A stretch of DNA of 44,571 nt from Octopus sinensis (taxonomy: Eukaryota). This document shows positions 874 to 37,765 of the stretch, in pieces; the first letter of the stretch is position 1; each line of letters begins with the position of its first letter. Location: contig NW_021834866.1 of the NCBI RefSeq assembly GCF_006345805.1, forward strand, positions 1-44,571, written 5' to 3'. The position numbers and the translations under genes are program-made. The notes beneath the pieces were generated by a model, which saw only the letters and a list, made by a program, of their open reading frames with translations, ran no database searches and was not told where the DNA came from.

Positions 874-918
<45 letters not shown>

Positions 919-1976: not shown

Positions 1977-2172
1977 TTAGCCACGAAGAATAATCTCTAA
2001 GGTACTAAGAATGCGTGTGACAACTTGAAAATCCACCCACCACACGCGATAGACTGGCGGTTGCACGGGTGCGAAAGCTACATTGTTATCCTCATTCAGT
2101 AAATGGTAGCTTTTAATGGGTGGAGAGCTGAACCATCCTGGGGTACAGAGGATTCGCAATCTAGAATAGGGT
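1977..2172 (-). CDS. Candidate alternative terminal coding exon of the Srrm234 gene (R-PYSRLRILCTPGWF...LEIILRG-stop)
   Basis: Two in-frame acceptors, ctttcag|A at 2172 and ttctag|A at 2160, both match the phase-2 donor at 11165. An in-frame TAA lies just upstream (2183-2181) and the frame is open to TAA at 1979-1977. I recognise no homology and there is no expression evidence. Confidence 0.3.
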
Positions 2173-2214
2173 CTGAAAGTTTACCACACCATAGTGGGTC
2201 ACACCATGGTTCCT

Positions 2215-2422
2215 CTGCTTTGTGGCAGAAGTAGGAAGAAAGAGTGAGAGAAAGATGTGGTGAAAGAGTACAGCAGGGTTCATCCCCCACCCCTCGCTGA
2301 AGCCTCGTGGAGCTGAGGTGTTTTTGCTCAATAAACACTCACAATGCCTGATCTGGGAATTGAAACTGCGTTCTTATGACCGCAAGTCCGCTGCCCTAAC
2401 CACTGGACCATTGCGCCTCCAC
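2215..2422 (-). mobile_element. tRNA-derived SINE, family C (label used here), 5' portion
   Basis: Minus strand starts gtggaggcgcaatggtccagtggttagggcagcggac (A-box-like). The body matches copies at 8161 and 26955. Confidence 0.8.
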
Positions 2423-2812
2423 TCTGCTGCCGCTGTTGCTGTTGTTCCTGCCACTGCCATTGCTTCTGCTACCACTGGACACCACCTGTGCATCATAGAC
2501 CACAACCACATGGTTGGGCATTCAGAGCTAACCCAACATGAGCATAGCGCCTCTGTGTGCTGTTTAGGGGTGTTCACTAAAATTATTTTTACACAGGGGA
2601 CACAGCTGAGCAAGACCCTTATGTCATGTCTATTAAATAATTGCCTATAGAATTCCGCTACAGTTAAACGGTTAACAAAGCCTCTTTATGTTTGTTGAGC
2701 ATATCTGACTGAAATGTCCAAGCAGGTACAAACGAATTGAGCCATGTAGAAGTTTTAATGTAGCCACATGTTGTGTTGTGTCGTATTATGTTCTGTTCTC
2801 TCAGTTGTGCTA

Positions 2813-3047
2813 CCTATTTCTTTACTACCCACAAGGGGCTAAACACAGAGAGGACAAACAAGGACAGACAAACGAATTAAGTCGATTACATCGACCCCAG
2901 TGCGTAACTGGTACTTATTTTATCGACCCCGAAAGGATGAAAGGCAAAGTCAACCTTGGCGGAATTTGAACTCAGAACGTAGCCGCAGACGAAATACCGC
3001 TAAGAATTTCGCCTGGTGTGCTAACGTTTCTGCCAGCTCGCCGCCTT
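2813..3047 (-). mobile_element. SINE family B (label used here), single unit with head
   Basis: Reverse complement of ggcggcgagctggcagaaacgttagc...gagttcaaattcc...gtaaagaaatagg. There are many copies in the window. Confidence 0.85.
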
Positions 3048-3489
3048 ATATTCTCGTTGTGCTACCATTGAGCAAGGACTCACAAGCAGTGAATGCTCTG
3101 CTTTGCATGTTCAAACCTATCACCCTTGTTCCTTAAGAGGAAGGGGTGGGGGATACATAATGAAAATAATAAACAGAATAAAAGATTAAGCATAAAACAG
3201 CAAAATCAAATTCAAAAATAAAAAATACATAGATTAAATAAAAATAAGAATTTTAGCAACTGAAAAATTAATGTAAAAACTGAAAATTTGATTTTAAAGC
3301 AAAACATAGAAAAAGAAAAAATTAAAAATAAAAACAAATTAGAATAATGAAAAAAAAAACAACAGAAAATAAATATAAGTGAATATAGATTTTTATGATT
3401 AAAAATGAAAACAAACAATTGTCCACACAAACATACATAGACATGAGTGCACAGGTAAATTTTTAAAAATAAATTTACATATATAGATT

Positions 3490-3721
3490 GAAAGGCACAC
3501 GCACACACACACACACACACACAAACACACACATGCTCAGTCACACACAAATAAATGAACCCTCATAACAAATTACTGAAGAAAACCAACATACACGCAT
3601 TCAAACAAATATATACTTTTATATATATATATATATACACACACACATATATATATATATATACATACACAAACACACATATATATACATGCACACACAC
3701 ACACACACACATATATACATG

Positions 3722-3782
<61 letters not shown>

Positions 3783-4010
3783 ACACACATACATATATAT
3801 ACATATATATATACACATACACACATATGTATATATATATATATATACATACACATATATACATACACACACACACGCATGTGTTAATGCATACATATAT
3901 ATATATATATATATACTGATATGTGTTAATGTGTGCATGTTTGTATGTATATACATGTATATTTATATGTATATACATGTCTACACCTGCTTAATAAATC
4001 ATGGAAATAA
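3490..4010. repeat. Compound (CA)n/(TA)n microsatellite field
   Basis: Direct reading. It explains the HT/YI/VC-repeat ORFs here. Confidence 0.95.
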
Positions 4011-4049
4011 AATGAAATTCCCACACACACACACATACACAAACATCAT

Positions 4050-4455
4050 TTATCTTTTACTGGTTTCAGTCATTGGATTGCAACCATACTGGAGCACTGC
4101 CTTGCTGGGTTAACTCAAACAGATCAACCCCAATACTTATATTTTTAAGTCTGTTACTTATCCTGTCACTTTCTTTAGTTGAACTACTTAGTTATTGGAA
4201 TGCAAACAAACCAACACTGGTTGTCAAACAGTGGCAGTGGGGGACAATCATAAAGACACATACACACACACACGTGCACATATATATATATAGGCAGTGG
4301 GATTCTGCACAGTTTCCATCTACCAAATTCGCTCAAAGGCATTATTAGCCATCCTGGGCCTATAGTAGAAGATACCTGCTCAAGGTACCATGCTGTGGGA
4401 CTGAACCCAAAACTACATAACTGTAAACAAAGCTTCTTAGCTACTCGGCCAAAAC
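4050..4455 (-). mobile_element. Degenerate SINE family A copy
   Basis: Diverged match to the reverse complement of the 11361-11770 copy (ttttactggtttcagtcatt...; agtttccatctaccaaattc...; gggactgaaccc). Confidence 0.65.
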
Positions 4456-5065
4456 TGTACCTAAATGTGTGTGTGTGCGTGCATGCACATGTGTGCATGT
4501 GTAAACACACACACACATGCAAGCAAACACGCTTTAATGCAAATTATTGAAGATCAACAAAGATGCACACATGCAGAAATACACATACACACACACAAAC
4601 ACACACTCATGCAGTTGTGTACATATACACACAAATACACACGTACACATATATACTCATAATCACACACACACATACACACACACAAATACTGAAATAA
4701 ACTCCTTACAACTACAAGAAAATAAACAATTATTTTAATAATGAATAAATAAATAATTAAGAGGTTGATTAAATGATTCATTAAGACTGTATAATTTGCA
4801 GTTGATGAGATTTTTTGAGATATTTATGCATTTCTAATTTTTAAATAATTAGTGAAGATGACTATTTGGCATTGGTATTGTTATTGTTGTCAGTGATGGT
4901 GATGATGATGTCACTAAGAACCTGGGTCAGCCCTGATTCCATGTAGGTGTAATCATGGACATGCCACCCATACAACCATACAAGCATGCAAGCTTTTCTC
5001 TAGATATCTACAACTATATTGGCAAATATGTTCCTTGCATGAGAAAGTAACGCTGGAACATACAT

Positions 5066-5561
5066 AAGAGATGTACCGGACACACGAGAGGTGTACTGGA
5101 CACAGAAGATGTGTGCTGGACACAGAAGAGGTGTACTGGACACAGAAGAGGTGTACTGGACACAGAAGATGTGTGCTGGACACAGAAGAGTTGTACTGGA
5201 CACAGAGGTGTACTGGACACAGAAGTGTACTGGACACAGAAGTGTACTGGACACAGAAGTGTACTGGACACATGAGAGGTGTACTGGACACAGAAGAGGT
5301 GTGCTGGACATAGAAGAAGTGTGCTGGACACATGACAGGCATACTTGACTAACGTGAGTTGTACTGGACACATGAGAGGTTTACTGGACCCACAAGAGGT
5401 TTACTGGACAAACGTGAGGTTTACTGGACACACGAGAGCTGTACTGGACACATGAGAGGTGTACTGGACCCATGAGAGGTTTACTGGACAAACGTGAGGT
5501 TTACTGGACCCATGAGAGGTGTACTCGACCCACGAGAGGTTTACTGGACACATAAGAAGTG
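5066..5561. repeat. 20-bp minisatellite, about 25 copies (three are 17-bp variants), core gtgtactggac
   Basis: The core recurs at 5071, 5091, 5111 ... 5539 with a 20-bp period, except for 17-bp steps between 5191 and 5259. Confidence 0.95.
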
Positions 5562-6062
5562 TCAGCATGCAGCTCACTCAGAAGACAATGAAAGAGAAGA
5601 GGAGTGCACCTTTATGGTTGGAAATGAGGGTTAAGGTATGAAAGGAGGAGGAGGAGAGGGCGAGGCTGAAGAGGCTCTGTTTGCAGAGGAGTTATGTGGC
5701 TACTTGCATTTAGGGGAATGTGTGAGAATGAATCAGTTGCAACTGCAAGGAAGCTAATAGGGATGATGAGGGGCCCAGGTGGCACCACAAGAAATACCAT
5801 AACACACACACACACACATCATAATCATCATCATAATCATCATCATCATGTTTTAATGTCCATCTTCCATCATGGTATTGACTGGAAGGCTCAACAGGAT
5901 TTGATAGGTCAAAGGACTGTGCCATGATCACAGCGCACACACACACACACACATACACATATGAACCCACACATACACACACACACAATCATATATACTT
6001 ATGCATACATATATACCAAGACATGCATACACAATTATGTATATGTCAATCATTAAACACAT

Positions 6063-6100
<38 letters not shown>

Positions 6101-6292
6101 TATACAGAAATACACATGTACACATTATATCAAAAACACAAACACATACATGCACACACACACACACACACACACTATATACAGAAACACAACACACACA
6201 CACACACACATTTAAGCATACACACACACACATATACACACATATGCGCATACAATTATGTGTACATCAGTTAGTAAACACACACACATGTA

Positions 6293-6461
6293 TATCATCA
6301 TCATCGTTTAACGTCCGCTTTCCATGCTAGCATGGGTTGGACGGTTCAACTGGGGTCTGGCAAGCCTGAAGGCTGCACCAGGCCAGTCAGATCTGGCAGT
6401 GTTTCTACAGCTGGATGCCCTTCCTAACGCCAACCACTCCGAGAGTGTAGTGGGTGATTTT
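6293..6461 (-). mobile_element. SINE-like family D (label used here), 3' end with (GAT)n tail on the minus strand
   Basis: catcatcgtttaacgtccgctttccatgctagcatgggttggacgg... is the reverse complement of the 3' end of the 8950-9301 copy. Confidence 0.85.
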
Positions 6462-6888
6462 ATGTGCCACCGACACAGGTGCCAGACGAGGCTGGCAGAC
6501 GGCCACGCTCGGATGGTGTTTTTTATGTGCCACCGGCACAGGTGCCAGACGAGGCTGGCTGACGGCCACGCTCGGATGGTGTTTTTTATGTGCCACCGAC
6601 ACAGGTTGCCAGACGAGGCTGGCAGACGGCCACGCTCGGATGGTGTTTTTATGTGACCACCGACACAGGTGCCAGACGAGGCTGGCTGACGGCCACGCTC
6701 GGATGGTGTTTTTTATGTGCCACCGACACAGGTGCCAGACGAGGCTGGCAGACGGCCACGCTCGGATGGTGTTTTTTATGTGCCACCGACACAGGTGCCA
6801 GACGAGGCTGGCTGACGGCCACGCTCGGATGGTGTTTTTTATGTGCCACCGGCACAGGTGCCAGACGAGGCTGGCTGACGGCCACGCC
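6462..6888. repeat. 63-bp tandem repeat (6 full copies plus one partial) derived from an internal segment of SINE family D
   Basis: Unit atgtgccaccgacacaggtgccagacgaggctggcagacggccacgctcggatggtgtttttt starts at 6462, 6525, 6588, 6651, 6715, 6778 and 6841. Its reverse complement resembles 9043-9090. Confidence 0.95.
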
Positions 6889-7489
6889 GTATATATACTA
6901 TATACAAAAACACGCCGTATATATACTATATACAGAAACACAAACATACATTTATGCATACATACACATATACATGCACAATTATGTGTATATCAATCAC
7001 TAAACACACACACACACACACATACACACACACACACATACACACACACACATACACACACACACACATATGCACAGATAAGCATCAAAACTTTGCACTA
7101 GATATACATATATCATGCCAGAATACGAGTGGACACCAGGTCCCATAAGCCATCTGACCCGCTGACCTTTGGTCACTTACAAAGACACATCAATAATAGT
7201 TTAATAAGCTGTACAAAATGCTTTGATTTATAGCCAGATCTGTAGCATTGCCAAGATATAGATTTGTGCTTGTGAGTTTCTGCATAAAGGGGCAGAGTGT
7301 GTGTGTGTATTTGTGTGTGCAAGTGTGTGTGTGTGTATTTGTGTGTGCATACATATGTATAAGTATAAATGATGATGATGTGCGTGTATATAGATATATG
7401 TATGTCTATATAATTATCATTTAATGTCAATTTTCCTTGCTGCCATGGCTAGAAAGTTGTGCACAAACACATTCATTTATAGTGTGTGT

Positions 7490-7490
7490 G

Positions 7491-7522
<32 letters not shown>

Positions 7523-8150
7523 TATATATACAGGCATACATATATAAATATATACATTCATGTGTGTGTTTGTGTATGTATATATATATATATATATATA
7601 ATACACACACACATACACACATATTTATATACAGGCATACATATATAAATATATACATTCATGTGTGTGTTTGTGTATGTATATATATATATATAAATAC
7701 ACACACACATACACACATATTTATATACAGGCATACATATATAAATATATACATTCATGTGTGTGTTTGTGTATGTATATATATATATATAAATACACAC
7801 ACACATACACACAATTTTATATACAGGCATACATATATAAATATATACTTCATGTGTGTGTTTGTGTATGTATATATATATATAGAAATACAACACACAC
7901 ATACACACATATTTATATACAGGCATACATATAAATATATACATTCATGTGTGTGTTTGTGTATGTATATATATATATATATAAATACACACACACATAC
8001 ACACATATATATACAGGCATACATATATAAATATATACATTCATGTGTGTGTTTGTGTATGTATATATATATATATATATAAATACACACACACATACAC
8101 ACATATTTATATACAGGCATACATATATAAATATATACATTCATGTGTTT
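7490..8150. repeat. About 96-bp tandem repeat of a composite microsatellite, 7 copies
   Basis: Marker caggcatac at 7531, 7632, 7728, 7824, 7920, 8014 and 8114. Confidence 0.9.
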
Positions 8151-8160
8151 GTGTGTGTGT

Positions 8161-8464
8161 GTGGAGGCACATGCCTAGTGGTTAGAGCAGCGGACTCGCA
8201 GTCGAGGGATCGCGGGTTCGAATCTTAGACCGGGCGATGTGTGTGCTTATGAGCAAAACGCCTAAGCTCCACGCGGCTCCGGCAAAAGGTAATGGCAAAC
8301 TTCTGCTGACTCTTTTGCCACAACTTTCTCTCACTCTTTCCTCCTGCATCTTGCAGCTCACCTGCGATAGACTGGCGTCCTATCCAGGTGGGGAACCTAT
8401 ACGCCAAGGAAACCGGGAAACTGGCCCTTATGAGCCAGGCACGGCTCGAGAAGGAACAAACAAC
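8161..8464 (+). mobile_element. tRNA-derived SINE, family C variant
   Basis: A-box-like tgcctagtggt and B-box gggttcgaatc, followed by a non-tRNA body shared with 2215-2422. Confidence 0.85.
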
Positions 8465-8779
8465 ATGTATATATATATATATGTATGAAGCTTCTTTGGA
8501 GAAATGGTTAAAACATAAGAGGATACACATTTTTTATCATCATCACCATTGTCATCATCATGGGTCACATGAAGTTTACTGAGGCCGTGTTTCTATCCGC
8601 AGATGCTTTTCCTGTTGCCAACCTTCAACTGCTTCCTAGCCCAGTTAATATTTACTCGTGTCTAGATGTGCTTCTGTGTTTGAAATTTTAAGGTGATATG
8701 AGGGACTCTCCCATTGTTAGACACTGTATGAGGGTTCAACAGGTGCAATGGGTGCCACATGTCAGATGTCAAAATGATC

Positions 8780-8890
8780 GCAGAGCAACGTGAAATGGAG
8801 TGCTTTGCTCAAGAACACAATGCAATGCCTGCTCTGGGAATTGAACCCACAATCTCACAATCAGAAGTGCAACCCCTAACCACCAAGAGA
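8780..8890 (-). mobile_element. tRNA-like SINE head fragment related to 40380-40620
   Basis: Shares gtg.tttgctcaagaacacaa followed by a reversed B-box (gggaattgaaccc). Confidence 0.6.
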
Positions 8891-8949
8891 TATGCACATT
8901 CCCATATATATATATATATATATATAATATATATATATTCACTTTGGAT

Positions 8950-9301
8950 TGTAGGGCGACCTGTTGTGCTTGAGGAGACCTATTGAGTCAAGTACATCAA
9001 CATCAAAATACAAATCAAACAGAAGTTGTAGCTGTGATACCTGTGCCGGTGGCACGTAAAAAGCACCATCCGAACGTGGCCAATGCCAGCGCTGCCTTGA
9101 CTGGCTTCCATGCTGGTGACACGTAAAATGGACCCACTACACGCATGTTGTAGTTGGTGTTAGGAAGGGCATCCAGCTGTAGAAACACTGCCAGATCAGA
9201 CTGGAGCCTGGTGCAGCCTCCTGGCTTCCCAGACCCAGGTCAAACTGTCCAACCCATGCTAGCATGGAAAACGGACGTTAAACGATGATGATGATGATGA
9301 T
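8950..9301 (+). mobile_element. SINE-like family D, sense orientation, (GAT)n tail
   Basis: ...gtgccggtggcacgtaaaaagcacc...aggaagggcatccagctgtagaaac...acggacgttaaacgatgatgatg. Confidence 0.85.
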
Positions 9302-10024
9302 ATATTGGAAGCAGATACAGCATGTAAAAGAGAATACTATGTTGGTTTAGACACGTGATGTGTATGAATGATGACAGCTGTATAAAGTGCTGATCGCTTA
9401 AAGTGGATGACACCTGTGGAAGAGGGAGACTCCGGAAGACATAGGATTAAGTAGTGAGGACTGAATTCAAGATTTTGGGCCTCATGGAGGAGATGACACT
9501 GGGCCATGATTTCTGGGGATACAAGGTTCTTCAACACCTGCCCACCTCAGTGAAACTGAGTTCTGGAAGTGCAATGTGCCACACCCACAGGTAACATAAG
9601 ACTTTTCATACACTGTGCCCAAATAAACCAAACTACATCTCTTCCCTTCCTCCTCCTCATGTTCCCTTTTCCCTTGCATTATACTTATCCCTCCCCCTCC
9701 ACTCCTGCTGCCCAATCCTGTCCCCCCTGCACTGCCAAGTGTATCGTTCCAATACTGTTGTGCCTAGGTTTCGCCAATCACTGCATCCCCACTTCTCACC
9801 CTACTTTTTTGCATTCACATGAACTCCCTACTCATGTGTCCTCAGCCCTGAGAGTATTCCCTAGCACATTGCCTCCATCCCTCTCGATTCTCTCATCTTT
9901 GCTCCCTCCCTCCCTCACACTCTCCACCTGCCACCTGTTGCTGTCCTTCTGTTGTACTCCAAACTCATCTCCTGGCACGAAGCCACTTCCTCCAGTACCC
10001 ACCCCTCTCAAAGGACGTTTGTCT

Positions 10025-10320
10025 TGCAAGTTGCTTGGTAAAAAAACATTCACTCATCCACTCAGTAAAGTGGTTGCTCTTTGGAAAGGCATCCAGCTGT
10101 AAAAACCATGCCAAAAAAGACATCACTAGTGCTGGTGCCACATAAAGAAGCACCGAATCCACTCTGTATAGTGGTTGGCATTATGAAGGACATCAAGTCA
10201 GAAGAACCATGTCAAAATAGACTCCAGAACATGCTGCAGTCCTCTGGTTTGTCAATTCCTGGCAAGCCATACAACCCATGACAGCATGGAAGCTGGCTGT
10301 TAACTGATGATCATGATCTA
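10025..10320 (+). mobile_element. Degenerate SINE family D copy
   Basis: Retains ggaaaggcatccagctgtaaaaaccatgcc and acaacccatgacagcatggaa. Confidence 0.6.
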
Positions 10321-10419
10321 TAAACATATATGCATATATAAGCATAGAAACTCTAAACACATAGGCTTCTGTATATATATCTGTGTGAGTGTGTGAATAT
10401 ACATATATATATACATGTT

Positions 10420-10683
10420 ATAAACATCTATATGCATATTTGCACGTGTATATATATGCATAGAAACTATAAATATACATGCATGTGTGTGTGTATATAT
10501 ATATATATATCTTTGAGTGTGAATATATGTATATATATATATATAAACATCTATACAAATATTTAATGTATATAGAAGCTATATACATAAATGCATATAA
10601 TTACATATATATATATATACACATATATAAACTAATGTGCATATATTCATACATGTATATGCATAAATTAGTTAGATACATGG

Positions 10684-10721
<38 letters not shown>

Positions 10722-10726
10722 GTATG

Positions 10727-10759
<33 letters not shown>

Positions 10760-10890
10760 GTATGTATATATATATATATATATATGTATGTATATATATA
10801 TATATATTATGTATGTATATATATATATATATATGTATGTATATATATATATATAAGCTATATACATATGTGCATATATTTATGTATATA
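10420..10890. repeat. (TA)n-rich microsatellite field
   Basis: Direct reading. Confidence 0.95.
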
Positions 10891-11099
10891 CTGAAACTCC
10901 TGAAAATATAAATGGCAATAAATGGAAAAGTCTAGAATCCTATAAAGAATCTCAGAAAAAAAAGAGTGAAATAAAATAGATTTCTTCAAAATTTTTATGC
11001 TAACAACAACAACAACAACCACAACAACAATGGAAACAACAAAAGCAGCAACGACAACAACAACAACAAAAACTATTGTCATGACAACAGTTAAGTGGC

Positions 11100-11154
11100 T
11101 AAAAAAGACAACAACAACATCAACATGGACTGGAAATTTTAATATAAAGTGTTA
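11100..11154 (-). terminator. Candidate intronic polyadenylation site directly after the eMIC-N exon
   Basis: Minus strand: read-through stop TAA at 11154-11152, ATTAAA at 11143-11138, CA at 11127-11126, then GU/U-rich tgttgatgttgttgttgtctttttt. Confidence 0.4.
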
Positions 11155-11164
11155 TGGGCCATAC

Positions 11165-11311
11165 CTCGTGATTCTTCGTTTATCAAGATGGCTTGGTGAG
11201 CCTGGTCGCCGTCGAATGGAAGGGCTGCGAGATTCTCTCCTCCTGGAGCCTCGGCTCTGACTTCGGCTGTAATCACGACCATGGCTGTGTGATCGGCTCG
11301 GACTTAAGCGC
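11165..11311 (-). CDS. Srrm234: 147-nt RS-rich exon encoding the N-terminal half of the eMIC domain (RLSPSRSHSHGRDYSRSQSRGSRRRESRSPSIRRRPGSPSHLDKRRIT)
   Basis: Acceptor is a T-tract then atatatcaacag|G; donor is AG|gtatgg; phase 2 at both ends and in frame with the 25452-25868 exon. SPSHLxxRRIT matches the SRRM3/SRRM4 eMIC motif (human SRRM4 RRRDSPSHLEARRITSARKRPIPY, from recall). Confidence 0.9.
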
Positions 11312-11360
11312 CTGTTGATATATAAAAAAAAAAAACGTACAGTATATAAATTAAAAAAAA

Positions 11361-11770
11361 GGCGCAGGAGTGGCTGTGTGGTAAGTAGCTTGCTAACCAA
11401 GCCACATGGTTCCGGGTTCAGTCCCACTGCGTGGCATCTTGGGTAAGTGTCTTCTGCTATAGCCCCGGGCCGACCAATGCCTTGTGAGTGGATTTGGTAG
11501 ACGGAAACTGAAAGAAGCCTGTCGTATATATGTATATATATATGTATGTGTGAGTGTGTTTGTGTGTCTGTGTTTGTCCCCCTAGCAATGCTTGACAACC
11601 GATGCTGGTGTGTTTATGTCCCCGTCACTTAGTGGTTCGGCAAAAGAGAACGATAGAATAAGTACTGGGCTTACAAAGAATAAGTCCCGGGGTCGATTTG
11701 CTCGACTAAAGGCGGTGCTCCAGCATGGCCGCAGTCAAATGATTGAAACAAGTAAAAGAGTAAAAGAGTA
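11361..11770 (+). mobile_element. Full-length tRNA-derived SINE family A
   Basis: Head ggcgcaggagtggctgtgtggt with B-box-like gggttcagtcc, internal TA/TG microsatellite, tail gtaaaagagtaaaagag. Multiple copies in the window. Confidence 0.9.
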
Positions 11771-11856
11771 CAGAGTTATGGGAACTGTTGTTCTAAGCAG
11801 AGTAAATATTAACAGCTTTGTGTGTGTGTGTGTGAAGATTTTCTAAGGATAATACG

Positions 11857-12429
11857 GGGAACTGGCAGAAATGTTAGCATACCGGGCAAAATGATTAGCG
11901 GTATTTCGTCCGCCACTGCATTCTGAGTTCAAATTCCGCCGAGGTCGACTTTGCCTTTCATCCTTTCAAGGTCGATTAAATAAGTACCAGTTATGCACTG
12001 GGGTCGATATAATCGACTTAATCTGTTTGTCTGTCCTTGTTTGTCCCCTCTGTGTGTAGCCCCTTGTGGGCAGTAAAGAAATAGGTATTTCGTCTGCCGC
12101 TACGTTGTAGGTTCAAATTCTGCCGAGGTTGACTTTGCCTTTCATCCTTTCGGGGTCAATTAAATAAGTACCAGTTATGCACTGGGGTCGATATAATCGA
12201 CTTAATCCGTTTGTCTGTCCTTGTTTGTCCCCTCTGTGTGTAGCCCCTTGTGGGTAGTAAAGAAATAGGTATTTCGTCTGTCATTATGTTCTATGTTCAA
12301 ATTCCACCGAGGTCAAGTTTACCTTTCATCCTTTTGGGGTCAATAAAGTACTGATTGCATACTGGGGTCGATCTAATCGACTGGCCCCCTTCCCCAAAAT
12401 TTCGGGCCTTGTGCCTAGAGTAGAAAAGA
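11857..12429 (+). mobile_element. SINE family B, head plus three tandem 184-bp units
   Basis: ggtatttcgtc recurs at 11900, 12084 and 12268. The third unit ends in a different tail (ccccttccccaaaatttcgggccttgtgcctagag). Confidence 0.9.
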
Positions 12430-12713
12430 CTATTTGGTATTCTAACAAAACATCCATGTTAAGTTGGATATAATGATTACCTTTTGGTACTAATACTTTC
12501 TCCATCACAAATAATTAATTTTTAATAAACCTGCCAGCCATCTGCAATATCAGTGTCTTAAAAGATGCTGATATTTTATATATCTTAGCAGCAAGGTTTG
12601 ACTGGCATGTAGTGACCGGATGCTCTCCACTGATGATATCTAGTAGAATGAAATCACATGATATGGGAGTTCCAGCACCTATGGCAGATGGTTCTCATCT
12701 ATGATATGTGTAT

Positions 12714-15342
12714 AGAAACCAGATGCCTATGTAGAAACCAAGTGCCTATTTAGAAACCAGATGCCTATTTAGAAACCAGATGCCTATGTAGGAACCAAGT
12801 GCCTATTTAGAAACCAGATGCCTATTTAGAAACCAGATGCCTATGTAGAAACCAAGTGCCTATTTAGAAACCAGATGCCTATTTAGAAACCAGATGCCTA
12901 TTTAGAAACCAGATGCCTATGTAGAAACCAAGTGCCTATTTAGAAACCAGATGCCTATTTAGAAACCAAGTGCCTATTTAGAAACCAGATGCCTATGTAG
13001 AAACCAGTGCCTATTTAGAAACCAGATGCCTATTTAGAAACCAGATGCCTATGTAGAAACCAAGTGCCTATTTAGAAACCAGATGCCTATTTAGAAACCA
13101 GATGCCTATGTAGAAACCAAGTGCCTATTTAGAAACCAGATGCCTATTTAGAAACCAGATGCCTATGTAGAAACCAAGTGCCTATTTAGAAACCAGATGC
13201 CTATTTAGAAACCAGATGCCTATTTAGAAACCAAGAGCCTATTTAGAAACCAGATGCCTATTTAAAAACCAGATGCCTATTTAGAAACCAAGAGCCTATT
13301 TAGAAACCAGATGCCTATTTAGAAACCAGATGCCTATGTAGAAACCAAGTGCCTATTTAGAAACCAGATGCCTATTTAGAAACCAGATGCCTATGTAGAA
13401 ACCAAGTGCCTATTTAGAAACCAGATGCCTATTTAGAAACCAGATGCCTATGTAGAAACCAAGTGCCTATTTAGAAACCAGATGCCTATTTAGAAACCAG
13501 ATGCCTATGTAGAAACCAAGTGCCTATTTAGAAACCAGATGCCTATGTAGAAACCAAGTGCCTATTTAGAAACCAGATGCCTATTTAGAAACCAGATGCC
13601 TATTTAGAAACCAAGAGCCTATTCAGACACCAAATGCTTATTTAGAAACCAAATGCCTATTTAGAAACCAGATGCCTATTTAGAAACCAAGAGCCTATTC
13701 AGACACCAAATGCTTATTTAGAAACCAGATGCCTATGTAGAAACCAAGTGCCTATTTAGAAACCAGATGCCTATTTAGAAACCAGATGCCTATGTAGAAA
13801 CCAAGTGCCTATTTAGAAACCAGATGCCTATTTAGAAACCAGATGCCTATTTAGAAACCAAGAGCCTATTCAGACACCAAATGCTTATTTAGAAACCAAA
13901 TGCCTATGTAGAAACCAAGTGCCTATTTAGAAACCAGATGCCTATTTAGAAACCAGATGCCTATTTAGAAACCAAGAGCCTATTCAGACACCAAATGCTT
14001 ATTTAGAAACCAGATGCCTATGTAGAAACCAAGTGCCTATTAGAAACCAGATGCCTATTTAGAACCAGATGCCTATGTAGAAACAAGTGCCTATTTAGAA
14101 CCAGATGCCTATTTAGAAACCAGATGCCTATGTAAAACCAAGTGCCTATTTAGAAACCAGATGCCTATTTAGAAACCAGATGCCTATGTAGAAACCAAGT
14201 GCCTTTTAGAAACCAATGCCTATTTAGAAACCAGATGCCTATTTAGAAACCAAGAGCCTATTCAGACACCAAATGCTTATTTAGAAACCAGATGCCTATG
14301 TAGAACCAAGTGCCTATTTAGAAACCAGATGCCTATTTAGAAACCAGATGCCTATGTAGAACCAAGTGCCTATTTAGAAACCAGATGCCTATTTAGAAAC
14401 CAGATGCCTATGTAGAAACCAAGTGCCTATTTAGAAACCAGATGCCTATTTAGAAACCAGATGCCTATTTAGAAACCAGATGCCTATTTAGAAACCAGAT
14501 GCCTATTTAGAAACCAAGAGCCTATTCAGACACCAAATGCTTATTTAGAAACCAAATGCCTATGTAGAAACCAAGTGCCTATTTAGAAACCAGATACCTA
14601 TTTAGAAACCAGATGCCTATGTAGAAACCAAGTGCCTATTTAGAAACCAGATGCCTATTTAGAAACCAGATGCCTATGTAGAAACCAAGTGCCTATTTAG
14701 AAACCAGATGCCTATTTAGAAACCAGATGCCTATGTAGAAACCAAGTGCCTATTTAGAAACCAGATGCCTATTTAGAAACCAGATGCCTATTTAGAAACC
14801 AAGAGCCTATTCAGACACCAAATGCTTATTTAGAAACCAAATGCCTATGTAGAAACCAAGTGCCTATTTAGAAACCAGATGCCTATTTAGAAACCAGATG
14901 CCTATGTAGAAACCAAGTGCCTATTTAGAAACCAGATGCCTATTTAGAAACCAGATGCCTATGTAGAAACCAAGTGCCTATTTAGAAACCAGATGCCTAT
15001 TTAGAAACCAGATGCCTATGTAGAAACCAAGTGCCTATTTAGAAACCAGATGCCTATTTAGAACCAGATGCCTATGTAAAACCAAGTGCCTATTTAGAAA
15101 CCAGATGCCTATTTAGAAACCAGATGCCTATGTAGAAACCAAGTGCCTATTTAGAAACCAGATGCCTATTTAGAAACCAGATGCCTATGTAGAAACCAAG
15201 TGCCTATTTAGAAACCAGATGCCTATTTAGAAACCAGATGCCTATGTAGAAACCAAGTGCCTATTTAGAAACCAAATGCCTATGTAGAAACCAAGAGCCT
15301 ATTCAGACACCAAATGCTTATTTAGAAACCAAATGCCTATGT
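12714..15342. repeat. 19-bp satellite array, about 138 units, with a 57-bp higher-order trimer
   Basis: Units agaaaccagatgcctattt, agaaaccagatgcctatgt and agaaaccaagtgcctattt alternate regularly. A variant doublet (...aagagcctattc agacaccaaatgcttattt) recurs 8 times. Confidence 0.98.
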
Positions 15343-16032
15343 GTGGGGATCTTTCAGGGCTCAAAATGCAGTATTTGACTTGCTAAGAAGTGAGTTGGAT
15401 ATAAAGATTATCTCTTGGTATTGATATTGCTTCCATCACAAATAATATATAGACACACACACACACACACATACACACACACATATACATTTTCTTTTTA
15501 CTATTTACTTTTTATTTGTTTCTGTCATCATCTTATACGTCCTTACATCATAAGAATACGAATTTAGAAACTTCAAGAGAACAGGAAATAATTTGTTCGA
15601 TAAATGCAGAACTCAAAGTAGATAAAGCTATAAATAATATTTACATACTATCATTTATAGCCTTATCTCCTTCAAGTTCTAGTTATATAATGAAATATAC
15701 ATACATATATATATATATATATAGATAGATTATATAGATAGATAGATATTTATATATCAAACAGACAGGAGCAGACATAATTAATAGTTAAATCTGATGA
15801 TAATGAGCCAATTAGTTTGAGGTGACTTTTAATGGTTTTGAAACTATTATTAACATAAACTGATTCTGTGCTATTTTAGTATTCATAATCATCATCATCG
15901 TTTCCATGTCAGCTGCTTCGGGCTTACAAGGGTCAGGCAAGAATATGTTGGTGCGGAGTTGTCTATGGCTGTATGCTCTTCCAGTTGCCTACTGTGATGT
16001 ATTTCTATGCGAGATAATATTCTACTGGTGTA

Positions 16033-16068
<36 letters not shown>

Positions 16069-16199
16069 TATATTATATATAAAGCTGAAGTTGTTTGTGT
16101 ATTGCAGGTTTGGTAGCCTACAACTAACACTATCTCCTCCGAGACCCTGCGGTGCAAGTTGACCAAAATTGAGAGTATGATAGAAGAAGGCTTGCTCTT

Positions 16200-16460
16200 C
16201 CTTCCGTAGAAGAAAAAACTCAAATCAAACCATATTAACATCAAAAATTATTTACATCAAAAAGGTGATTTTTTTCTATGAAAATCTCGATTTTTAACGG
16301 TTTTTTGACTGCTGTGTTGCCACTTTTCGGTGTATTTCAACCAGAAAAATGTTCACTTAAAGAGAATAACAAGCTACATAATGCAAAATTTTGACTTTTA
16401 AAAAATTCCAATTCTAAAGGGTTGAAACAAACCCGAGCAATGCCGAGCGATACTGCTAGT
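16200..16460 (+). mobile_element. Possible non-autonomous Helitron 3' end
   Basis: Ends in GC-rich cccgagcaatgccgagcg followed by CTAG (16456-16459) and T, the Helitron 3' signature. The hairpin is imperfect and the 5' end was not identified. Confidence 0.4.
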
Positions 16461-16712
16461 ATATATATATAATTCCTAGAGAGTTAGAGGTTGTGAATCC
16501 AACCAACTAAGGGATAATATCTATCCAATGTATATTGGATAGATATATTGCTGGTAGAATACCCAATTAGTAATACACAAGTGTTTTTTCACTGCATGGT
16601 AATTACACTACTGAATGTAATAAATGGGTGAAGGTAAAGAGTTATTTTAACCCTAATTTATACGGCAATAAGAAAATGGAGGGGATCAATAGGTGGTATT
16701 CATCAACATATA

Positions 16713-16880
16713 TACGATGGGCTTCTTTCAGTTTCCGTCTACCAAATTCACTCACAAGGCTTTGGTCGGCCCGGGGCTATAGTAGAAGACACTTGCCCAA
16801 GGTGTGCTATGCAGTGGGAATGAACCCAGAACCATGTGGTTGGTAAGCAAGCTACTTACCACACAGCCACTTCTGTGCCT
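16713..16880 (-). mobile_element. SINE family A, 5' half
   Basis: Reverse complement of the head of the 11361 copy. Confidence 0.85.
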
Positions 16881-16999
16881 AAATAAGAAATGCAATTTTG
16901 AATTACGTGGGATTTGAACACAGAATGTTAACAGAAGAATTACCATAAAGCATTTTTGTCCAACTTTAACGATTCTGCCAATGTGCAAGGGGATACATG

Positions 17000-17222
17000 T
17001 ATATATACATACATAAATATATACATACATACATACATATATATATGTAAGTATGTATATGTGTATGTATATATAAATATATATATGTCTACATATACAT
17101 GCATATACATATAAATATATACACACACACTTCAATTTAGATAGATATATTATTCAAATATACATTTATGTTTATACATTTAAGTATACTCACACACACA
17201 CATATATATACACACATACACA

Positions 17223-17256
<34 letters not shown>

Positions 17257-17331
17257 CATACATATATATATATACATGCATATATATATATAAATACATA
17301 TATATATAAATACATATATATATATATACAT

Positions 17332-17372
<41 letters not shown>

Positions 17373-17447
17373 CATACATATATATATATATATACATACA
17401 TATATTTATACATACATATATATATATATACATACATATATATATAC

Positions 17448-17484
<37 letters not shown>

Positions 17485-17550
17485 TATACACACATACACA
17501 CACACATATATATATATACATGTATGTATGCGTATATATATATATATTCA
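17000..17550. repeat. Long (TA)n/(CATA)n microsatellite field; similar fields at 17870-18640, 31140-31520 and 36060-36950
   Basis: Direct reading. Confidence 0.95.
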
Positions 17551-17880
17551 ACAGACCAGAAGCAGTTTGCAAAGTTAATGAGCACCATGAAGAAAGCCTC
17601 ATCATAATGGCTGCCAGCCCTCCCCCCCCCCCGACAGACTCGATCTCCCAACTGTTTTATAGTCCAAGCTCGATGCTATGGTTTTATTTCAAGTTATATT
17701 TCAACTTTTACAATACACTTTTGGGTTTTAGTTTTCAAAAACTAAAACTTCTTTTCACTTTTTTATGACAAAATTGCAAATTTGTGCAATAACATTTTCA
17801 AATAACGACATATATTTGTCTCTCTTTCGAAATTTCTGTGTCTTTTTCTGATTCTCAATCTTGTCGCTATTATATATATA

Positions 17881-17911
<31 letters not shown>

Positions 17912-18126
17912 GATATACACAAACATATATACACACCTACACTTATACATATGTGTAGTTGTGTGTATATTTGAACGCGTATTTTATATATATATTGCAC
18001 TTAGATAATTATGCACATATATCGTATATATATATATATATATACATATATGATATTATATGTGTGTATGTGTTTGTAAGTATATGTATGCATGTATATA
18101 TAAGTGTATATATATATGTATGTCAA

Positions 18127-18163
<37 letters not shown>

Positions 18164-18207
18164 AATTTGAGCTTGTATGTAAATGTCTGTGTGGGTATAT
18201 ATGTACA

Positions 18208-18245
<38 letters not shown>

Positions 18246-18315
18246 CACACGCACGCAAATATGTATTCATAGTAAATGCATACACACATATATCTATACA
18301 TAAAATGTATATTTA

Positions 18316-18357
<42 letters not shown>

Positions 18358-18580
18358 ATTTACATACCTATAGAAATATACACATACATACCTTTGCGCA
18401 TGAATGTATATATGCATGTGACGCAGCTCTCTATGCATTCACACATGTATACATTCTAAAATATGAAACAGAAAGCATTTCGTTGGGTTCTTTGACATAC
18501 ATAGCAGGTAACCTGTTCATTCAGAATTGATCAACATCATATACACACACACACTTGATGCTGCTGGATCTCTCTTCATC

Positions 18581-18632
<52 letters not shown>

Positions 18633-18635
<3 letters not shown>

Positions 18636-19052
18636 TTTCTCTTTTATTTGTTTCAGTCAGTTGACTGCGGCTATGCTGGAGCACCGCCTTTAGTCGAGCA
18701 AATCGACCCCGGGACTTATTCTTTCTAAGCCCAGTACTTATTCTATCAGTCTCTTTTGCCGAACCGCTAAGTGACGGGGATGTAAACACTCCAACATCGG
18801 TTGTCAAGCAATGCTAGGGGGACAAACACAGACACACAAACATATACACACACACTTATATATATATATATATATATATATACGACAGGCTTCTTTCAGT
18901 TTCCGTCTACCAAATCCACTCACAAGGCATTGGTCGGCCCGGGGCTATAGCAGAAGACACTTGTCCAAGATGCCACGCAGTGGGACTGAACCCGGAACCA
19001 TGTGGTTGGTAAGCAAGCTACTTACCACACAGCCACTCCAGCCACTCCTGCG
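18633..19052 (-). mobile_element. Full-length SINE family A
   Basis: High similarity to the reverse complement of 11361-11770 along its whole length. Confidence 0.9.
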
Positions 19053-19123
19053 ATTAATTAGCTTTTTTTTAATTGCATTGATTGTGAATGTACAATTGTA
19101 CTTTGTTATACTGAGTATACATA

Positions 19124-19330
19124 TTAACCCTATAGCATTTAAACCAGTGATATCTGGCCAAAATAAACTGCTTGTTTTACTTTCAAGCTGGTCAGATCTG
19201 ATTTCTCACACCTACCCTACAATATCGTTCTAAAAAAATTAACAGTTGCCTCATCAAAATCTCAAAGTGCAAGATTAATTCAAAGCAATGCGAACAAATA
19301 AGCATCACTATTTGACAGAATAATTATTTC
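19124..19330 (-). mobile_element. TTAA-bounded (piggyBac-type) MITE copy
   Basis: Starts ttaaccctatagcattt. The interior is the reverse complement of the two copies at 25905-26337. Confidence 0.6.
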
Positions 19331-19334
19331 TACT

Positions 19335-19730
19335 CTAGGCACAAGACCTTGAAAATTTGGCGGGAAGGGGGAATTCGATCACATCGGCCTCAGTGCATAA
19401 CTGGTACTTATTTTATCGACCCCCAAAAGGATGAAAGGCAAAGACGATCACAGCAGAATGTAGTGGCAGACAAAATGCTGCTAAGCATTTCACCCGGCAT
19501 GCTAACATTTCTTATTTGTTCATTGTCCACAAGGGGCCAAACACAGAGGGGACAAACAAGGACAGACAAACGGATTAAGTCGATTACATCGACCCCAGTG
19601 CGTAACTGGTACTTAATTTATCGACCCCGAAAGGATGAAAGGCAAAGTTGACCTCAATGGAATTTGAACTCACAACGTAACGGCAGACGAAATACCTATT
19701 TCTTTACTACCCACAAGGGGCTAAACTTTG
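19335..19730 (-). mobile_element. SINE family B, several tandem or partial units
   Basis: Repeated ggtactta..ttatcgacccc.aaaggatgaaaggcaaag blocks. Confidence 0.85.
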
Positions 19731-20863
19731 TCCATGTTTGGAATGAGAAGGAGAAGTATTTTAACTGCTTGGATACAGGTGAGTGTTGGCAACAGGAAGA
19801 GCACACTGCTGTAGGACATCTGCTGCAACGGCTTTGCTTTGATTAAGCAAGGATGGAAATGTCAATGTTATAAATGACGATGTTACATTTGTAGAAATGT
19901 TCATTAACTCAAGCTTAAGCCACCAATGTGATTGATCAAGAGATGCATCTTAATTAAAAGTTTAATAAAAAAATTGAAAAATGATTAGGGAATAATTGCT
20001 GGTGTACAGCACTGTCTTGAGTATATTGAAAACTTCTGTATGATCTAAGGAGAAGCTGTGTTCATTTCTATCTTGTTCCTTTTAATTCACCCAGTTTGAT
20101 TCCACAATTAAAGTTTGAGAGCTAAAATTTGTTTTTGTGAAGACATAGAGACATTATCTCTGCTCTTTCATTAATGTTTCAGTTTTGGGGATTGTAATCT
20201 GATGATTTTCCAAAAAAGGAATATTTGCCTACTTCCATATGCAAAGTGTTGCATGCTTATTAATTTACCAGTGTATATCTAAATGGTCCATACACCATTC
20301 TCTCAAGTTCCAATACGTACCTTGACGATGTCTCTTCCTAAATGTGAAACGATGTTGGAGGATACGTCTTTAGAATTTTCTCTCTTCCTTCATAATTACA
20401 TAACATCGTTTTCCTTTCTAGGTACTCGTCAGGATATTGCCTTCACTTCATAAATAATTACTTTGCTTAAACATTTAACCAATTAACGAACAGAACTGAC
20501 TGATTGACAAACCTAGCTGACTGGTTAATCAATGGAATGATTAATCAAACAATTAGTTAATTGGTTAAATGGTTAGTTGATTAATAATAATAAAATAATA
20601 ATAAAAACGTGTGTGGTTATTATTGGCATAACTCCTCTCCCAAGATTTGACAAAATATCATTATTTGCTTCATCATCAAAGTCTTGACAGTGATTCTTCC
20701 ATAATTGTATGGCTAATTCCTTTATTTATTTCAGTCAATTTACTATGGCCATGCTAGAGCACCACCTTAAATTTGTTAAAGCAGAACTTCTAAGGCTGGA
20801 TGCAATTTCTGTCAGTAACCCTCACCTATTTCTAAGCAAGAATAATATTTCATTATGGCCATA

Positions 20864-21265: not shown

Positions 21266-21339
21266 ATGTTATTATCCCGCACAGATGGATTGCTTCATTG
21301 ATGGCATATCTAAAAATCCATAACTACCCCTAGCAAGTT

Positions 21340-37722: not shown

Positions 37723-37765
<43 letters not shown>

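What the first reader, a model, noticed from the sequence alone, without database searches (positions are those of the whole stretch)
11000..11164. Built-in off-switch: stop codon, poly(A) signal and GU-rich element right behind the eMIC-N donor
Seen: if the donor at 11164 is not used, the frame reads RRIT-R-Y-G-P-stop (TAA 11154-11152). ATTAAA follows 8 nt later, then a CA 11 nt on, then a GU/U-rich run (tgttgatgttgttgttgtctttttt), with more (TTG)n at 11000-11075. This is the canonical order of a cleavage and polyadenylation site. Inference: competition between U1 and this site could give a short isoform with a broken eMIC, a compact tissue switch for the whole microexon programme. Caveat: ATTAAA is common in AT-rich DNA.
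Basis: partly seen in the sequence, partly recalled or inferred. Interest (0 to 1): 0.7.

Follow-up and report, generated by a model that had tools for sequence, protein, structure and literature searches.

The report
Poly(A)-like site behind Srrm234 eMIC exon

Summary
Exon 11311-11165 encodes the first part of the SRRM_C/eMIC domain, with its donor GT at 11164. Read-through gives R-Y-G-P-TAA, followed by ATTAAA, a CA, a 25-nt GU/U-rich run and a (TTG)n microsatellite.

On this strand a hexamer+CA+GU-rich arrangement within 30 nt occurs at only about 0.15% of positions, so it is unusual. The thresholds were chosen after seeing the site, and the GU-richness comes from a microsatellite in a microsatellite-rich intron.

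The early stop carries no information. Four of six other spiralian loci stop immediately after this donor, because a phase-2 AG|GTRR donor creates a stop.

The switch idea is already known. It is published for Drosophila Srrm234. In other molluscs and echinoderms, database proteins diverge exactly after "KRRIT" into an eMIC tail (SARKRPVPYYRP) or a short RS-rich tail. In Lymnaea and Plakobranchus that tail is a separate exon 1.5-3.2 kb downstream.

The octopus-like window holds neither the tail exon nor the second eMIC exon within 11.1 kb. No cephalopod or transcript data were reachable. The canonical hexamer is absent at the six other loci.

Verdict: a known switch point, and an unproven (about 30%) read-through poly(A) variant.

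The parts
25452..25868 (-). Upstream Arg/Ser-rich coding exon of the Srrm234-like gene (417 nt, phase 2 in, phase 2 out). Acceptor ...ctgcttccag|G, donor CGAAG|GTTAGA.
   Evidence: Sequence and frame were read. The frame joins exactly to the next exon (AG + G = Arg). The exon resembles Haliotis asinina XP_067651420.1 at residues ~318-443 (KQNG...SLSYS...).
11312..25451 (-). 14.1-kb intron between the RS exon and the first eMIC exon. It is full of SINE copies and tandem repeats, including a 2.6-kb array of a 19-bp unit at 12713-15340.
11165..11311 (-). First eMIC-coding exon ('eMIC-N'), 147 nt. It encodes (R)RLSPSRSHSHGRDYSRSQSRGSRRRESRSPSIRRRPGSPSHLDKRRIT(R/S).
   Evidence: Pfam SRRM_C at 32.2 bits, E=1.6e-7, profile 13-55/67. 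It is 83-88% identical to the eMIC-N of Haliotis and unnamed spiralians. The exon boundary after RRIT is shared with all homologues.
11159..11164 (-). 5' splice site GAG|GTATGG. It matches the consensus at +1,+2,+3,+5 and not at +4,+6.
   Evidence: The same donor is non-consensus at +4..+6 in all seven loci compared.
11152..11163 (-). Read-through codons TAT GGC CCA TAA. The stop is at 11154-11152, so an unspliced product would end ...KRRITRYGP.
   Evidence: A stop this close occurs at 18-24% of pseudo-donors.
11138..11143 (-). ATTAAA hexamer, 22 nt into the intron. It is a candidate polyadenylation signal.
   Evidence: It is the only canonical hexamer within 60 nt of this donor among the seven loci.
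11126..11127 (-). CA dinucleotide, candidate cleavage site 17 nt from the start of the hexamer. The 3' UTR would be only about 26 nt.
   Evidence: Inferred, with no read support.
11101..11125 (-). GU/U-rich run UGUUGAUGUUGUUGUUGUCUUUUUU. It is a candidate downstream element or a binding site for GU/U-binding proteins.
   Evidence: 92% G+T, in the top ~3% of the stretches that follow the 151 hexamers in the window.
11000..11075 (-). (TTG)n microsatellite on the transcribed strand.
   Evidence: TRF reports (AAC)n at 11002-11073, 24 copies, 75% matches. TTG-type arrays occur at only one other place on this strand (about 42.0 kb).
1..11100 (-). First 11.1 kb of the intron after the eMIC-N donor. 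It contains no RS-tail alternative exon and no second eMIC exon (SARKRPVPYYRP).
   Evidence: tblastn with nine alternative tails and four eMIC-C sequences, a motif search, and a scan for acceptor plus RS-rich ORF were all negative.

Best explanation
The region is the 3' boundary of the first eMIC-coding exon of a molluscan-type Srrm234 ('SRRM2-like') gene on the minus strand.

Its donor (11164) is the conserved branch point where invertebrate Srrm234 pre-mRNAs are processed in one of two ways. They are spliced either to the second eMIC exon (...RIT|SARKRPVPYYRP, active in microexon splicing) or to a short Arg/Ser-rich terminal exon (...RIT|RS..., no functional eMIC).

I think the octopus-like gene most likely does the same, with both downstream exons lying beyond the window, because its introns are about 10-20 times longer than those of the snails and oyster I compared.

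On this reading:
- The in-frame stop is a by-product of the reading frame.
- The ATTAAA plus (UUG)n/U-run is ordinary AT-rich, microsatellite-rich intron sequence that happens to resemble a poly(A) site.
- The site is kept silent by U1 snRNP bound 21 nt upstream.

Shown: exon identity, frame, the motifs, the isoform split in relatives, and the genomic position of the alternative exon in two gastropods.

Inferred: that the octopus-like gene keeps that exon outside the window, and that the poly(A)-like site is not used.
For: - Exon identity: SRRM_C hit. Closest relatives are molluscan Srrm234 proteins.
- Two isoform classes diverge exactly after KRRIT.
  - eMIC class: Haliotis asinina X2, Lymnaea, Saccostrea, Solemya, Mytilus, Aplysia, Strongylocentrotus, Antedon.
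  - RS-tail class: Haliotis X4, Pomacea X3, Biomphalaria X3, Apostichopus, and three intron-less transcript contigs, P0020, P0023 and P0025.
- Only the eMIC class completes the Pfam profile: 53.9 bits with profile 16-67/67, against 22 bits with profile 16-57.
- The RS-tail exon is a separate exon between the two eMIC exons. It lies 3.2 kb after the donor in Lymnaea and 1.5 kb after it in Plakobranchus. It is included as a cassette in Dreissena and Plakobranchus proteins.
- Drosophila has the same architecture: a shared donor in the first eMIC exon, a proximal non-eMIC exon with its own poly(A) site, and a distal eMIC exon (PMC8797185).
- No canonical hexamer lies within 60 nt of this donor at six other spiralian loci.
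- Immediate stops occur at four of those six loci, so an early stop is generic.
- The upstream intron is 14.1 kb here and 0.77 kb in Lymnaea, so absence of the alternative exon from 11.1 kb says little.
- Other equally GU-rich hexamer sites sit deep in this gene's introns and rest on microsatellites.
Against: - The arrangement hexamer + CA + at least 88% GU within 30 nt of a donor is found at only 0.14-0.18% of positions on this strand. Here it sits at the one donor where regulated 3' end processing is expected.
- The order and spacing are textbook. The intron is long and the donor suboptimal, which are the conditions that favour intronic polyadenylation (my own knowledge).
- No RS-tail exon was found in 11.1 kb, so the off-isoform has no visible source in the window.
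- Lymnaea has a variant TATAAA at the same offset (+21), followed by GT-rich sequence.
Confidence: 0.5

Rival explanations
1. The site is a working intronic poly(A) site (a composite terminal exon).

When U1 snRNP fails to engage the suboptimal donor GTATGG, CPSF binds ATTAAA at +22 and CstF binds the GU/U-rich run. The transcript is then cleaved near 11126. The mRNA encodes ...KRRITRYGP with a ~26-nt 3' UTR and lacks the second half of the eMIC.

In neurons, a GU/U-binding protein of the ELAV/Hu type could mask the downstream element. That would allow splicing across the intron of more than 11 kb to the second eMIC exon.
For: - The motifs and spacing are confirmed.
- The arrangement is rare on this strand, at 0.14-0.18% of positions, and ranks in the top ~3% of hexamers for downstream GU content.
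- The site lies at the known isoform branch point.
- The intron is long and the donor suboptimal.
- A review describes ELAV binding to UUGUUUU-type motifs downstream of poly(A) signals to block cleavage (PMC11802343).
- The truncated product lacks SRRM_C profile positions 56-67.
Against: - There is no transcript evidence of any kind.
- The canonical hexamer is not conserved at six other spiralian loci.
- Relatives make the off-isoform by splicing, which requires this donor to work in all tissues.
- A 5' splice site 21 nt upstream is expected to inhibit the site strongly (my own knowledge).
- No UGUA upstream element lies in the preceding 100 nt.
- The GU element is a microsatellite.
- The thresholds used for the rarity estimate were chosen after seeing the site.
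Confidence: 0.3
2. The GU/U-rich run and the (UUG)n tract act as an intronic splicing regulator of the weak eMIC-N donor rather than as a poly(A) downstream element.

Proteins that bind U- or GU-rich RNA just downstream of weak 5' splice sites (TIA1/TIAR-, CELF- or ELAV-type) would raise or lower U1 recruitment. That would tune which downstream exon is chosen. On this reading the ATTAAA is incidental.
For: - The donor is suboptimal here and at all six other loci.
- The U/GU-rich run starts 40 nt after the donor.
- TTG-type arrays are otherwise found at only one other place on this strand of the window.
- Lymnaea and L001 also have GT-rich sequence within 60 nt of the donor.
- Enhancement of weak donors by downstream U-rich elements is established (my own knowledge).
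Against: - No conservation could be tested, and no binding data exist.
- Classical TIA1 sites lie closer to the donor, within about 5-35 nt.
- Microsatellites are abundant throughout this window.
- Saccostrea, L002, L005 and L006 show no comparable element.
Confidence: 0.15

Closest known systems
Drosophila Srrm234 (CG7971) 3' end switch (Torres-Mendez et al. 2019; 2022, PMC8797185)
   Same: - The gene family is the same, and so is the branch point, the donor of the first eMIC-encoding exon.
- Processing downstream of that donor decides whether a functional eMIC is made.
- The off-isoform keeps the first eMIC exon but lacks microexon activity.
- GU/U-binding ELAV proteins are the published regulators.
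   Different: - In the fly the off-isoform uses a separate proximal exon with its own 3' splice site and poly(A) site (pA1).
- The proposal here is cleavage 37-40 nt into the intron without any splicing.
- No such proximal exon was found within 11.1 kb of the window, and no expression data exist for this locus.
Molluscan and echinoderm Srrm234 isoform pairs (e.g. Haliotis asinina SRRM2-like X2 versus X4; Lymnaea and Plakobranchus loci)
   Same: - The eMIC-N exon is 71-88% identical.
- The exon boundary and phase are identical (AG|N).
- The eMIC tail SARKRPVPYYRP is encoded by the next eMIC exon.
   Different: - These species have an RS/Tyr-rich alternative tail exon 1.5-3.2 kb downstream.
- Their introns are 0.4-6 kb, against more than 11 kb here.
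- None has AATAAA or ATTAAA within 60 nt of the donor. Lymnaea has TATAAA at +21.
Composite terminal exon / intronic polyadenylation switches, such as immunoglobulin M secreted versus membrane form (my own knowledge)
   Same: - A 5' splice site competes with a poly(A) site in the intron that follows it.
- A weak donor and a long intron favour the poly(A) site.
- The outcome changes the protein's C-terminus.
   Different: - In known cases the poly(A) site usually lies about a hundred to thousands of nucleotides from the donor, not 21 nt.
- Use of those sites is shown by RNA data, whereas here it is only a sequence resemblance.
U1 snRNP suppression of nearby poly(A) sites (telescripting; U1-70K inhibition of poly(A) polymerase) (my own knowledge)
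   Same: A functional 5' splice site lies immediately upstream of a poly(A)-like signal. This is the configuration in which U1 is known to silence cleavage and polyadenylation.
   Different: This mechanism predicts that the site is normally silent, which is the opposite of a default off-switch. It was not tested here.

Membership tests
SRRM_C / eMIC domain of Srrm234-Srrm3-Srrm4 | Significant match to Pfam PF15230 (SRRM_C) | tested here: met
   The exon alone scores 32.2 bits against a cut-off of 27, E=1.6e-7, profile positions 13-55/67.
SRRM_C / eMIC domain of Srrm234-Srrm3-Srrm4 | Invariant core RSPSIRRR-GSPSHLDKRRIT ending at a phase-2 exon boundary | tested here: met
   22 columns are invariant across eight spiralian sequences. 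The boundary is the same in all homologues.
SRRM_C / eMIC domain of Srrm234-Srrm3-Srrm4 | Second half of the domain (SARKRPVPYYRP, profile positions 56-67) encoded by a downstream exon | tested here: inconclusive
   It was not found in window 1-11164. The intron may run off the window. The feature is present in Haliotis X2, Saccostrea, Lymnaea and Plakobranchus.
Srrm234 alternative-last-exon switch (Drosophila type) | The donor of the first eMIC exon is shared by eMIC and non-eMIC isoforms | tested here: inconclusive
   This is shown for relatives. No isoform data exist for this locus.
Srrm234 alternative-last-exon switch (Drosophila type) | A proximal non-eMIC terminal exon with its own poly(A) site lies between the two eMIC exons | tested here: inconclusive
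   It is present in Lymnaea (53393-53534 of L004, with AATAAA about 300 nt after its stop) and in Plakobranchus. It was not found in the 11.1 kb available here.
Srrm234 alternative-last-exon switch (Drosophila type) | Neural restriction of the eMIC isoform; dependence on ELAV-family proteins | not testable with these tools
   This needs tissue RNA data or perturbation experiments.
Metazoan cleavage and polyadenylation site | AAUAAA or AUUAAA hexamer 10-30 nt upstream of the cleavage site | tested here: met
   ATTAAA lies at 11143-11138 and CA at 11127-11126.
Metazoan cleavage and polyadenylation site | U- or GU-rich downstream element within about 40 nt of the cleavage site | tested here: met
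   The run at 11125-11101 is 92% G+T and ends in six U.
Metazoan cleavage and polyadenylation site | Auxiliary upstream UGUA elements | tested here: not met
   There is no TGTA in the 100 nt upstream of the hexamer. This feature is common but not obligatory.
Metazoan cleavage and polyadenylation site | Transcripts that end there with untemplated A tails | not testable with these tools
   No cephalopod transcript or protein could be reached in the collections.
Metazoan cleavage and polyadenylation site | Conservation of the signal at orthologous positions | tested here: inconclusive
   No canonical hexamer lies within 60 nt at six other spiralian loci, and Lymnaea has TATAAA at +21. These species are too distant for intron alignment, and close relatives were unavailable.
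Composite terminal exon (intronic polyadenylation) | Suboptimal 5' splice site followed by a long intron | tested here: met
   The donor is GAG|GTATGG, and the intron is longer than 11.1 kb.

The most novel reading that the evidence does not exclude
In this cephalopod-like lineage the ancestral spliced 'off' exon of Srrm234 would be supplemented or replaced by a minimal composite terminal exon.

A poly(A) signal would sit 22 nt behind the eMIC-N donor, so that U1 snRNP and the cleavage machinery compete for overlapping RNA. A GU/U-binding neuronal protein (ELAV-type) on the (UUG)n/U-run would tip the balance towards splicing.

That would place the whole on/off decision for the microexon regulator within about 65 nt.
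Probability: 0.3. Interest if true: 0.5.

Novelty: new member of a known kind. Interest (0 to 1): 0.3.

Why it matters
[quoted passage not shown] In Drosophila, its mis-expression outside neurons is harmful (PMC8797185). How each lineage keeps it neuron-specific is therefore a real question, and cephalopods are the invertebrates with the largest nervous systems.

This work pins down the exact branch-point exon in the window. It also shows that gastropods and echinoderms, with a cassette form in a bivalve, carry the same two-tail isoform split described for flies.

If the read-through poly(A) site were used, it would be an unusually compact variant of a known switch. It would also be a clean system for studying U1-versus-CPSF competition. 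If it is not used, which is my leading view, the finding is an ordinary AT-rich, microsatellite-bearing intron start at an interesting but already understood position.

Tried and rejected
**Searches for cephalopod orthologues or transcripts**
- Protein word-index search with the 52-aa read-through peptide found nothing.
- The same search with the RS exon plus eMIC-N, and an exhaustive HMMER search of 1.84 billion representatives, found only non-cephalopod hits. The best was Haliotis at 47.5 bits.
- Exact look-up of the window's own 148-aa ORF is not on record.
- A search with full-length Haliotis Srrm234 returned 373 hits at E<=1e-10. No cephalopod was among the best 120 listed.
- Conservation among close relatives and transcript ends therefore could not be tested.

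**Metagenome scans**
- A profile scan found 152 pattern matches, none confirmed.
- A degenerate DNA pattern for HLDKRRIT+AGGT gave one non-cephalopod contig, L006.

**Locus look-ups**
- Look-ups for Haliotis X4 and X2, Pomacea X3 and Mytilus are not on record.

**Search for the second eMIC exon or an RS-tail exon in window 1-11164**
- The motif regex, tblastn with 13 tails, and the acceptor plus RS-ORF scan were all negative.

**Considered and rejected**
- Rejected: that the in-frame stop is meaningful. It is expected at 18-24% of positions, and it is immediate at four of six other loci because a phase-2 AG|GTRR donor encodes a stop.
- Rejected: that the 89 nt after the donor belong to a repeat family. 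That stretch is unique in the window.
- Bacterial promoter/terminator, tRNA and Rfam scans of the region or window found nothing relevant.
- Three long ORFs elsewhere in the window have no Pfam hit.

**Paper not available**
- The 2019 paper that first described eMIC isoforms across non-vertebrates is not held. I could not check whether an octopus locus was already analysed there.

Full report
**1. What is there**

The gene lies on the minus strand. Reading that strand, an exon runs from 11311 to 11165. It follows the acceptor ...tttttatatatcaacag|G and ends at the donor GAG|GTATGG, whose GT is at 11164-11163.

Its translation is RLSPSRSHSHGRDYSRSQSRGSRRRESRSPSIRRRPGSPSHLDKRRIT. This matches Pfam SRRM_C (PF15230) above the curated cut-off: 32.2 bits against 27, E=1.6e-7, profile positions 13-55 of 67. 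SRRM_C covers the conserved C-terminal region of SRRM3/SRRM4/Srrm234, which the literature calls the eMIC (PMC8797185).

An Arg/Ser-rich exon at 25868-25452 joins it in frame across a 14.1-kb intron.

If the donor is not used, the frame continues R-Y-G-P-TAA, with the stop at 11154-11152. The elements that follow are:
- ATTAAA at 11143-11138
- CA at 11132-31 and at 11127-26
- the run tgttgatgttgttgttgtctttttt at 11125-11101
- a (TTG)n microsatellite at 11075-11000

Every coordinate in the finding is correct.

**2. Is it more than chance?**

I used every position, or every GT, on the transcribed strand of the window as a pseudo-donor.
- A stop within three codons occurs at 18-24%.
- A canonical hexamer within 30 nt occurs at 2.5-4.7%.
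- Hexamer + CA + a 25-nt stretch of at least 88% G+T occurs at 0.14-0.18%.
- Of the 151 AATAAA/ATTAAA hexamers on both strands, only four reach that GU level, and this is one of them.

The poly(A)-like arrangement is therefore unusual at a given donor, roughly 1-2 per thousand. Three cautions apply.
- I set the thresholds after seeing the site.
- With a looser threshold (at least 80% GU), 10 of 65 hexamers on this strand qualify.
- The GU-richness comes from a microsatellite in a window that has 118 tandem-repeat rows. The other three top-scoring sites also rest on (GT)n or (ATG)n repeats deep in introns.

The 89 nt after the donor are not part of a repeat family.

The stop codon deserves no weight. 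At six other loci with this exon, the stop falls immediately after the junction codon in four (TGA, TAG, TAG, TAA). The reason is that a phase-2 donor AG|GTRR reads AGG-TRR.

**3. What the relatives show**

No cephalopod protein or contig could be reached. The closest hit is Haliotis asinina 'serine/arginine repetitive matrix protein 2-like isoform X4' (XP_067651420.1).

A search with that protein returned many spiralian and echinoderm Srrm234 proteins. Their C-termini fall into two classes that diverge exactly after ...SPSHLDKRRIT.

| Class | Sequence after RIT | Found in |
|---|---|---|
| A (eMIC) | SARKRPVPYYRPSP... | Haliotis X2, Lymnaea, Saccostrea, Solemya, Mytilus, Aplysia, Strongylocentrotus, Antedon |
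| B (RS tail) | Short Arg/Ser/Tyr-rich tail, e.g. Haliotis X4 RSGSRERKYDDHHGSRSRSYNRRRSPSPYYRSSKRPRDRY | Haliotis X4, Pomacea X3, Biomphalaria X3, Apostichopus, P0020, P0023, P0025 |

The three Logan contigs P0020, P0023 and P0025 are 1.4-2.8 kb long. They carry the whole coding sequence without introns, so they are spliced transcripts.

Only class A completes the Pfam profile: 53.9 bits with positions 16-67/67. Class B reaches 22 bits with positions 16-57. The octopus-like read-through product reaches position 55.

In genomic DNA the class-B tail is a separate exon between the two eMIC exons.
- In Lymnaea stagnalis the donor is at 50157. The tail exon is at 53393-53534, with its own stop and an AATAAA about 300 nt further on. 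The second eMIC exon starts near 56020.
- In Plakobranchus the tail exon lies 1.5 kb after the donor and the second eMIC exon 4.7 kb after it.
- Dreissena and Plakobranchus protein models include the tail exon as a cassette before SARKRPVPY.
- In Saccostrea the intron between the eMIC exons is only 439 nt.

This is the architecture published for Drosophila. [quoted passage not shown] Elav/Fne promote the distal choice, and the isoform without the second exon has no microexon activity (PMC8797185; reviews PMC10551640 and PMC11802343). The same paper states that in non-vertebrate bilaterians the eMIC is restricted to neurons by post-transcriptional processing.

**4. What this means for the finding**

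The concept is published, however, and the mechanism in every relative I could inspect is splicing to a separate exon, not read-through.

A canonical hexamer within 60 nt of this donor occurs only in the window. Lymnaea has the variant TATAAA at +21 followed by GT-rich sequence. The other five loci have nothing.

The window contains neither an RS-tail exon nor the second eMIC exon in the 11.1 kb after the donor. That absence is weak evidence. The upstream intron here is 14.1 kb against 0.77 kb in Lymnaea, so the downstream exons may simply lie beyond position 1.

If the gene keeps the spliced off-isoform, the donor must work in all tissues. U1 snRNP bound 21 nt upstream of the hexamer would then be expected to silence it (established U1 suppression of nearby poly(A) sites; my own knowledge).

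**5. Weighing the explanations**

For the poly(A) reading:
- the rarity of the arrangement
- its position at the one donor where regulated 3' processing is expected
- the long intron and the suboptimal donor
- a GU/U-rich element of the type ELAV proteins bind downstream of poly(A) signals

Against it:
- no transcript evidence
- no conservation where it could be tested
- a conserved alternative mechanism in relatives
- the microsatellite origin of the GU element
- expected U1 suppression
- no UGUA upstream element

My estimates are:
- about 0.5 that the site is fortuitous and silent
- about 0.3 that it is used to a detectable degree
- about 0.15 that the GU/U tract matters as a splicing regulator of the weak donor rather than as a poly(A) element (this overlaps partly with the other two)

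**6. Novelty and score**

The exon and its branch-point role are a new member of a known kind, namely the Srrm234 eMIC 3' switch. The read-through variant, if real, would be a new variant of that kind: a composite rather than a skipped terminal exon, unusually close to the donor.

Interest is 0.3. The source organism was not identified by any tool.

Noticed in passing
window 11365-11620 (-), with copies at 19042-18783, 20868-21122, 28376-28147, 43797-44057, 16880-16706, 37571-37745, 4408-4204 and others: A ~260-bp SINE-like repeat, whose sequence looks tRNA-derived, has at least ten copies in the window at 72-93% identity. One copy ends only ~50 nt upstream of the eMIC-N acceptor. ARAGORN and Rfam call nothing there.
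   Followed up: partly
window 12713-15340: A 2.6-kb tandem array of about 139 copies of a 19-bp unit (TAGAAACCAGATGCCTATT, 87% matches) lies inside the intron between the RS exon and the eMIC-N exon.
   Followed up: no
window 5067-5552, 6458-6887, 7491-8162: Three further minisatellites, with units of 20, 63 and 96 bp, lie in the intron downstream of the eMIC-N exon. Their long open frames are repeat artefacts.
   Followed up: no
window 28000-30000 and 42000-44000: Two stretches show strong purine or G skew (GC skew +0.33). One is an (AGA/GAA)n-rich block at 29171-29827. The other is a set of (TGA)n/(TGG)n blocks at 42458-43362, adjacent to (CCA)n at 41624-42081.
   Followed up: no
L001 1884, L002 ~629, L003 46920, L004 50158, L005 29966, L006 ~2592, window 11164: The donor after the first eMIC exon departs from the GTRAGT consensus at +4..+6 at all seven loci (GTGGGG, GTGACC, GTAGGA, GTAGAG, GTACAG, GTAATA, GTATGG). 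A consistently weak donor fits a regulated splice site, but seven loci give no statistics.
   Followed up: partly
L004 50158-50230 (Lymnaea stagnalis): The variant hexamer TATAAA sits 21 nt into the intron, the same offset as ATTAAA in the window. It is followed by GT-rich sequence including (GT)5. This could be coincidence or a recurrent feature.
   Followed up: no
window 11165-11311 and 25452-25868: Both coding exons have lengths divisible by three (147 and 417 nt) and the same phase. Skipping either would keep the reading frame.
   Followed up: no
proteins P0051 (Mizuhopecten X2) and P0094 (Mya arenaria): Two bivalve models continue after KRRITR with non-RS sequence. In Mya the continuation repeats an upstream part of the same protein (AKQTHQIVEATAEKNARLKEA...), which suggests a tandem duplication or a model artefact at this junction.
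   Followed up: no
window 33084-33470 (+): A 128-aa ORF begins with an Asn/Asp-rich low-complexity stretch. It ends in a motif (...GLKAEIEGFILAAQDQSLLTRNY...) that reminded me of retrotransposon ORF tails. It has no Pfam hit.
   Followed up: partly
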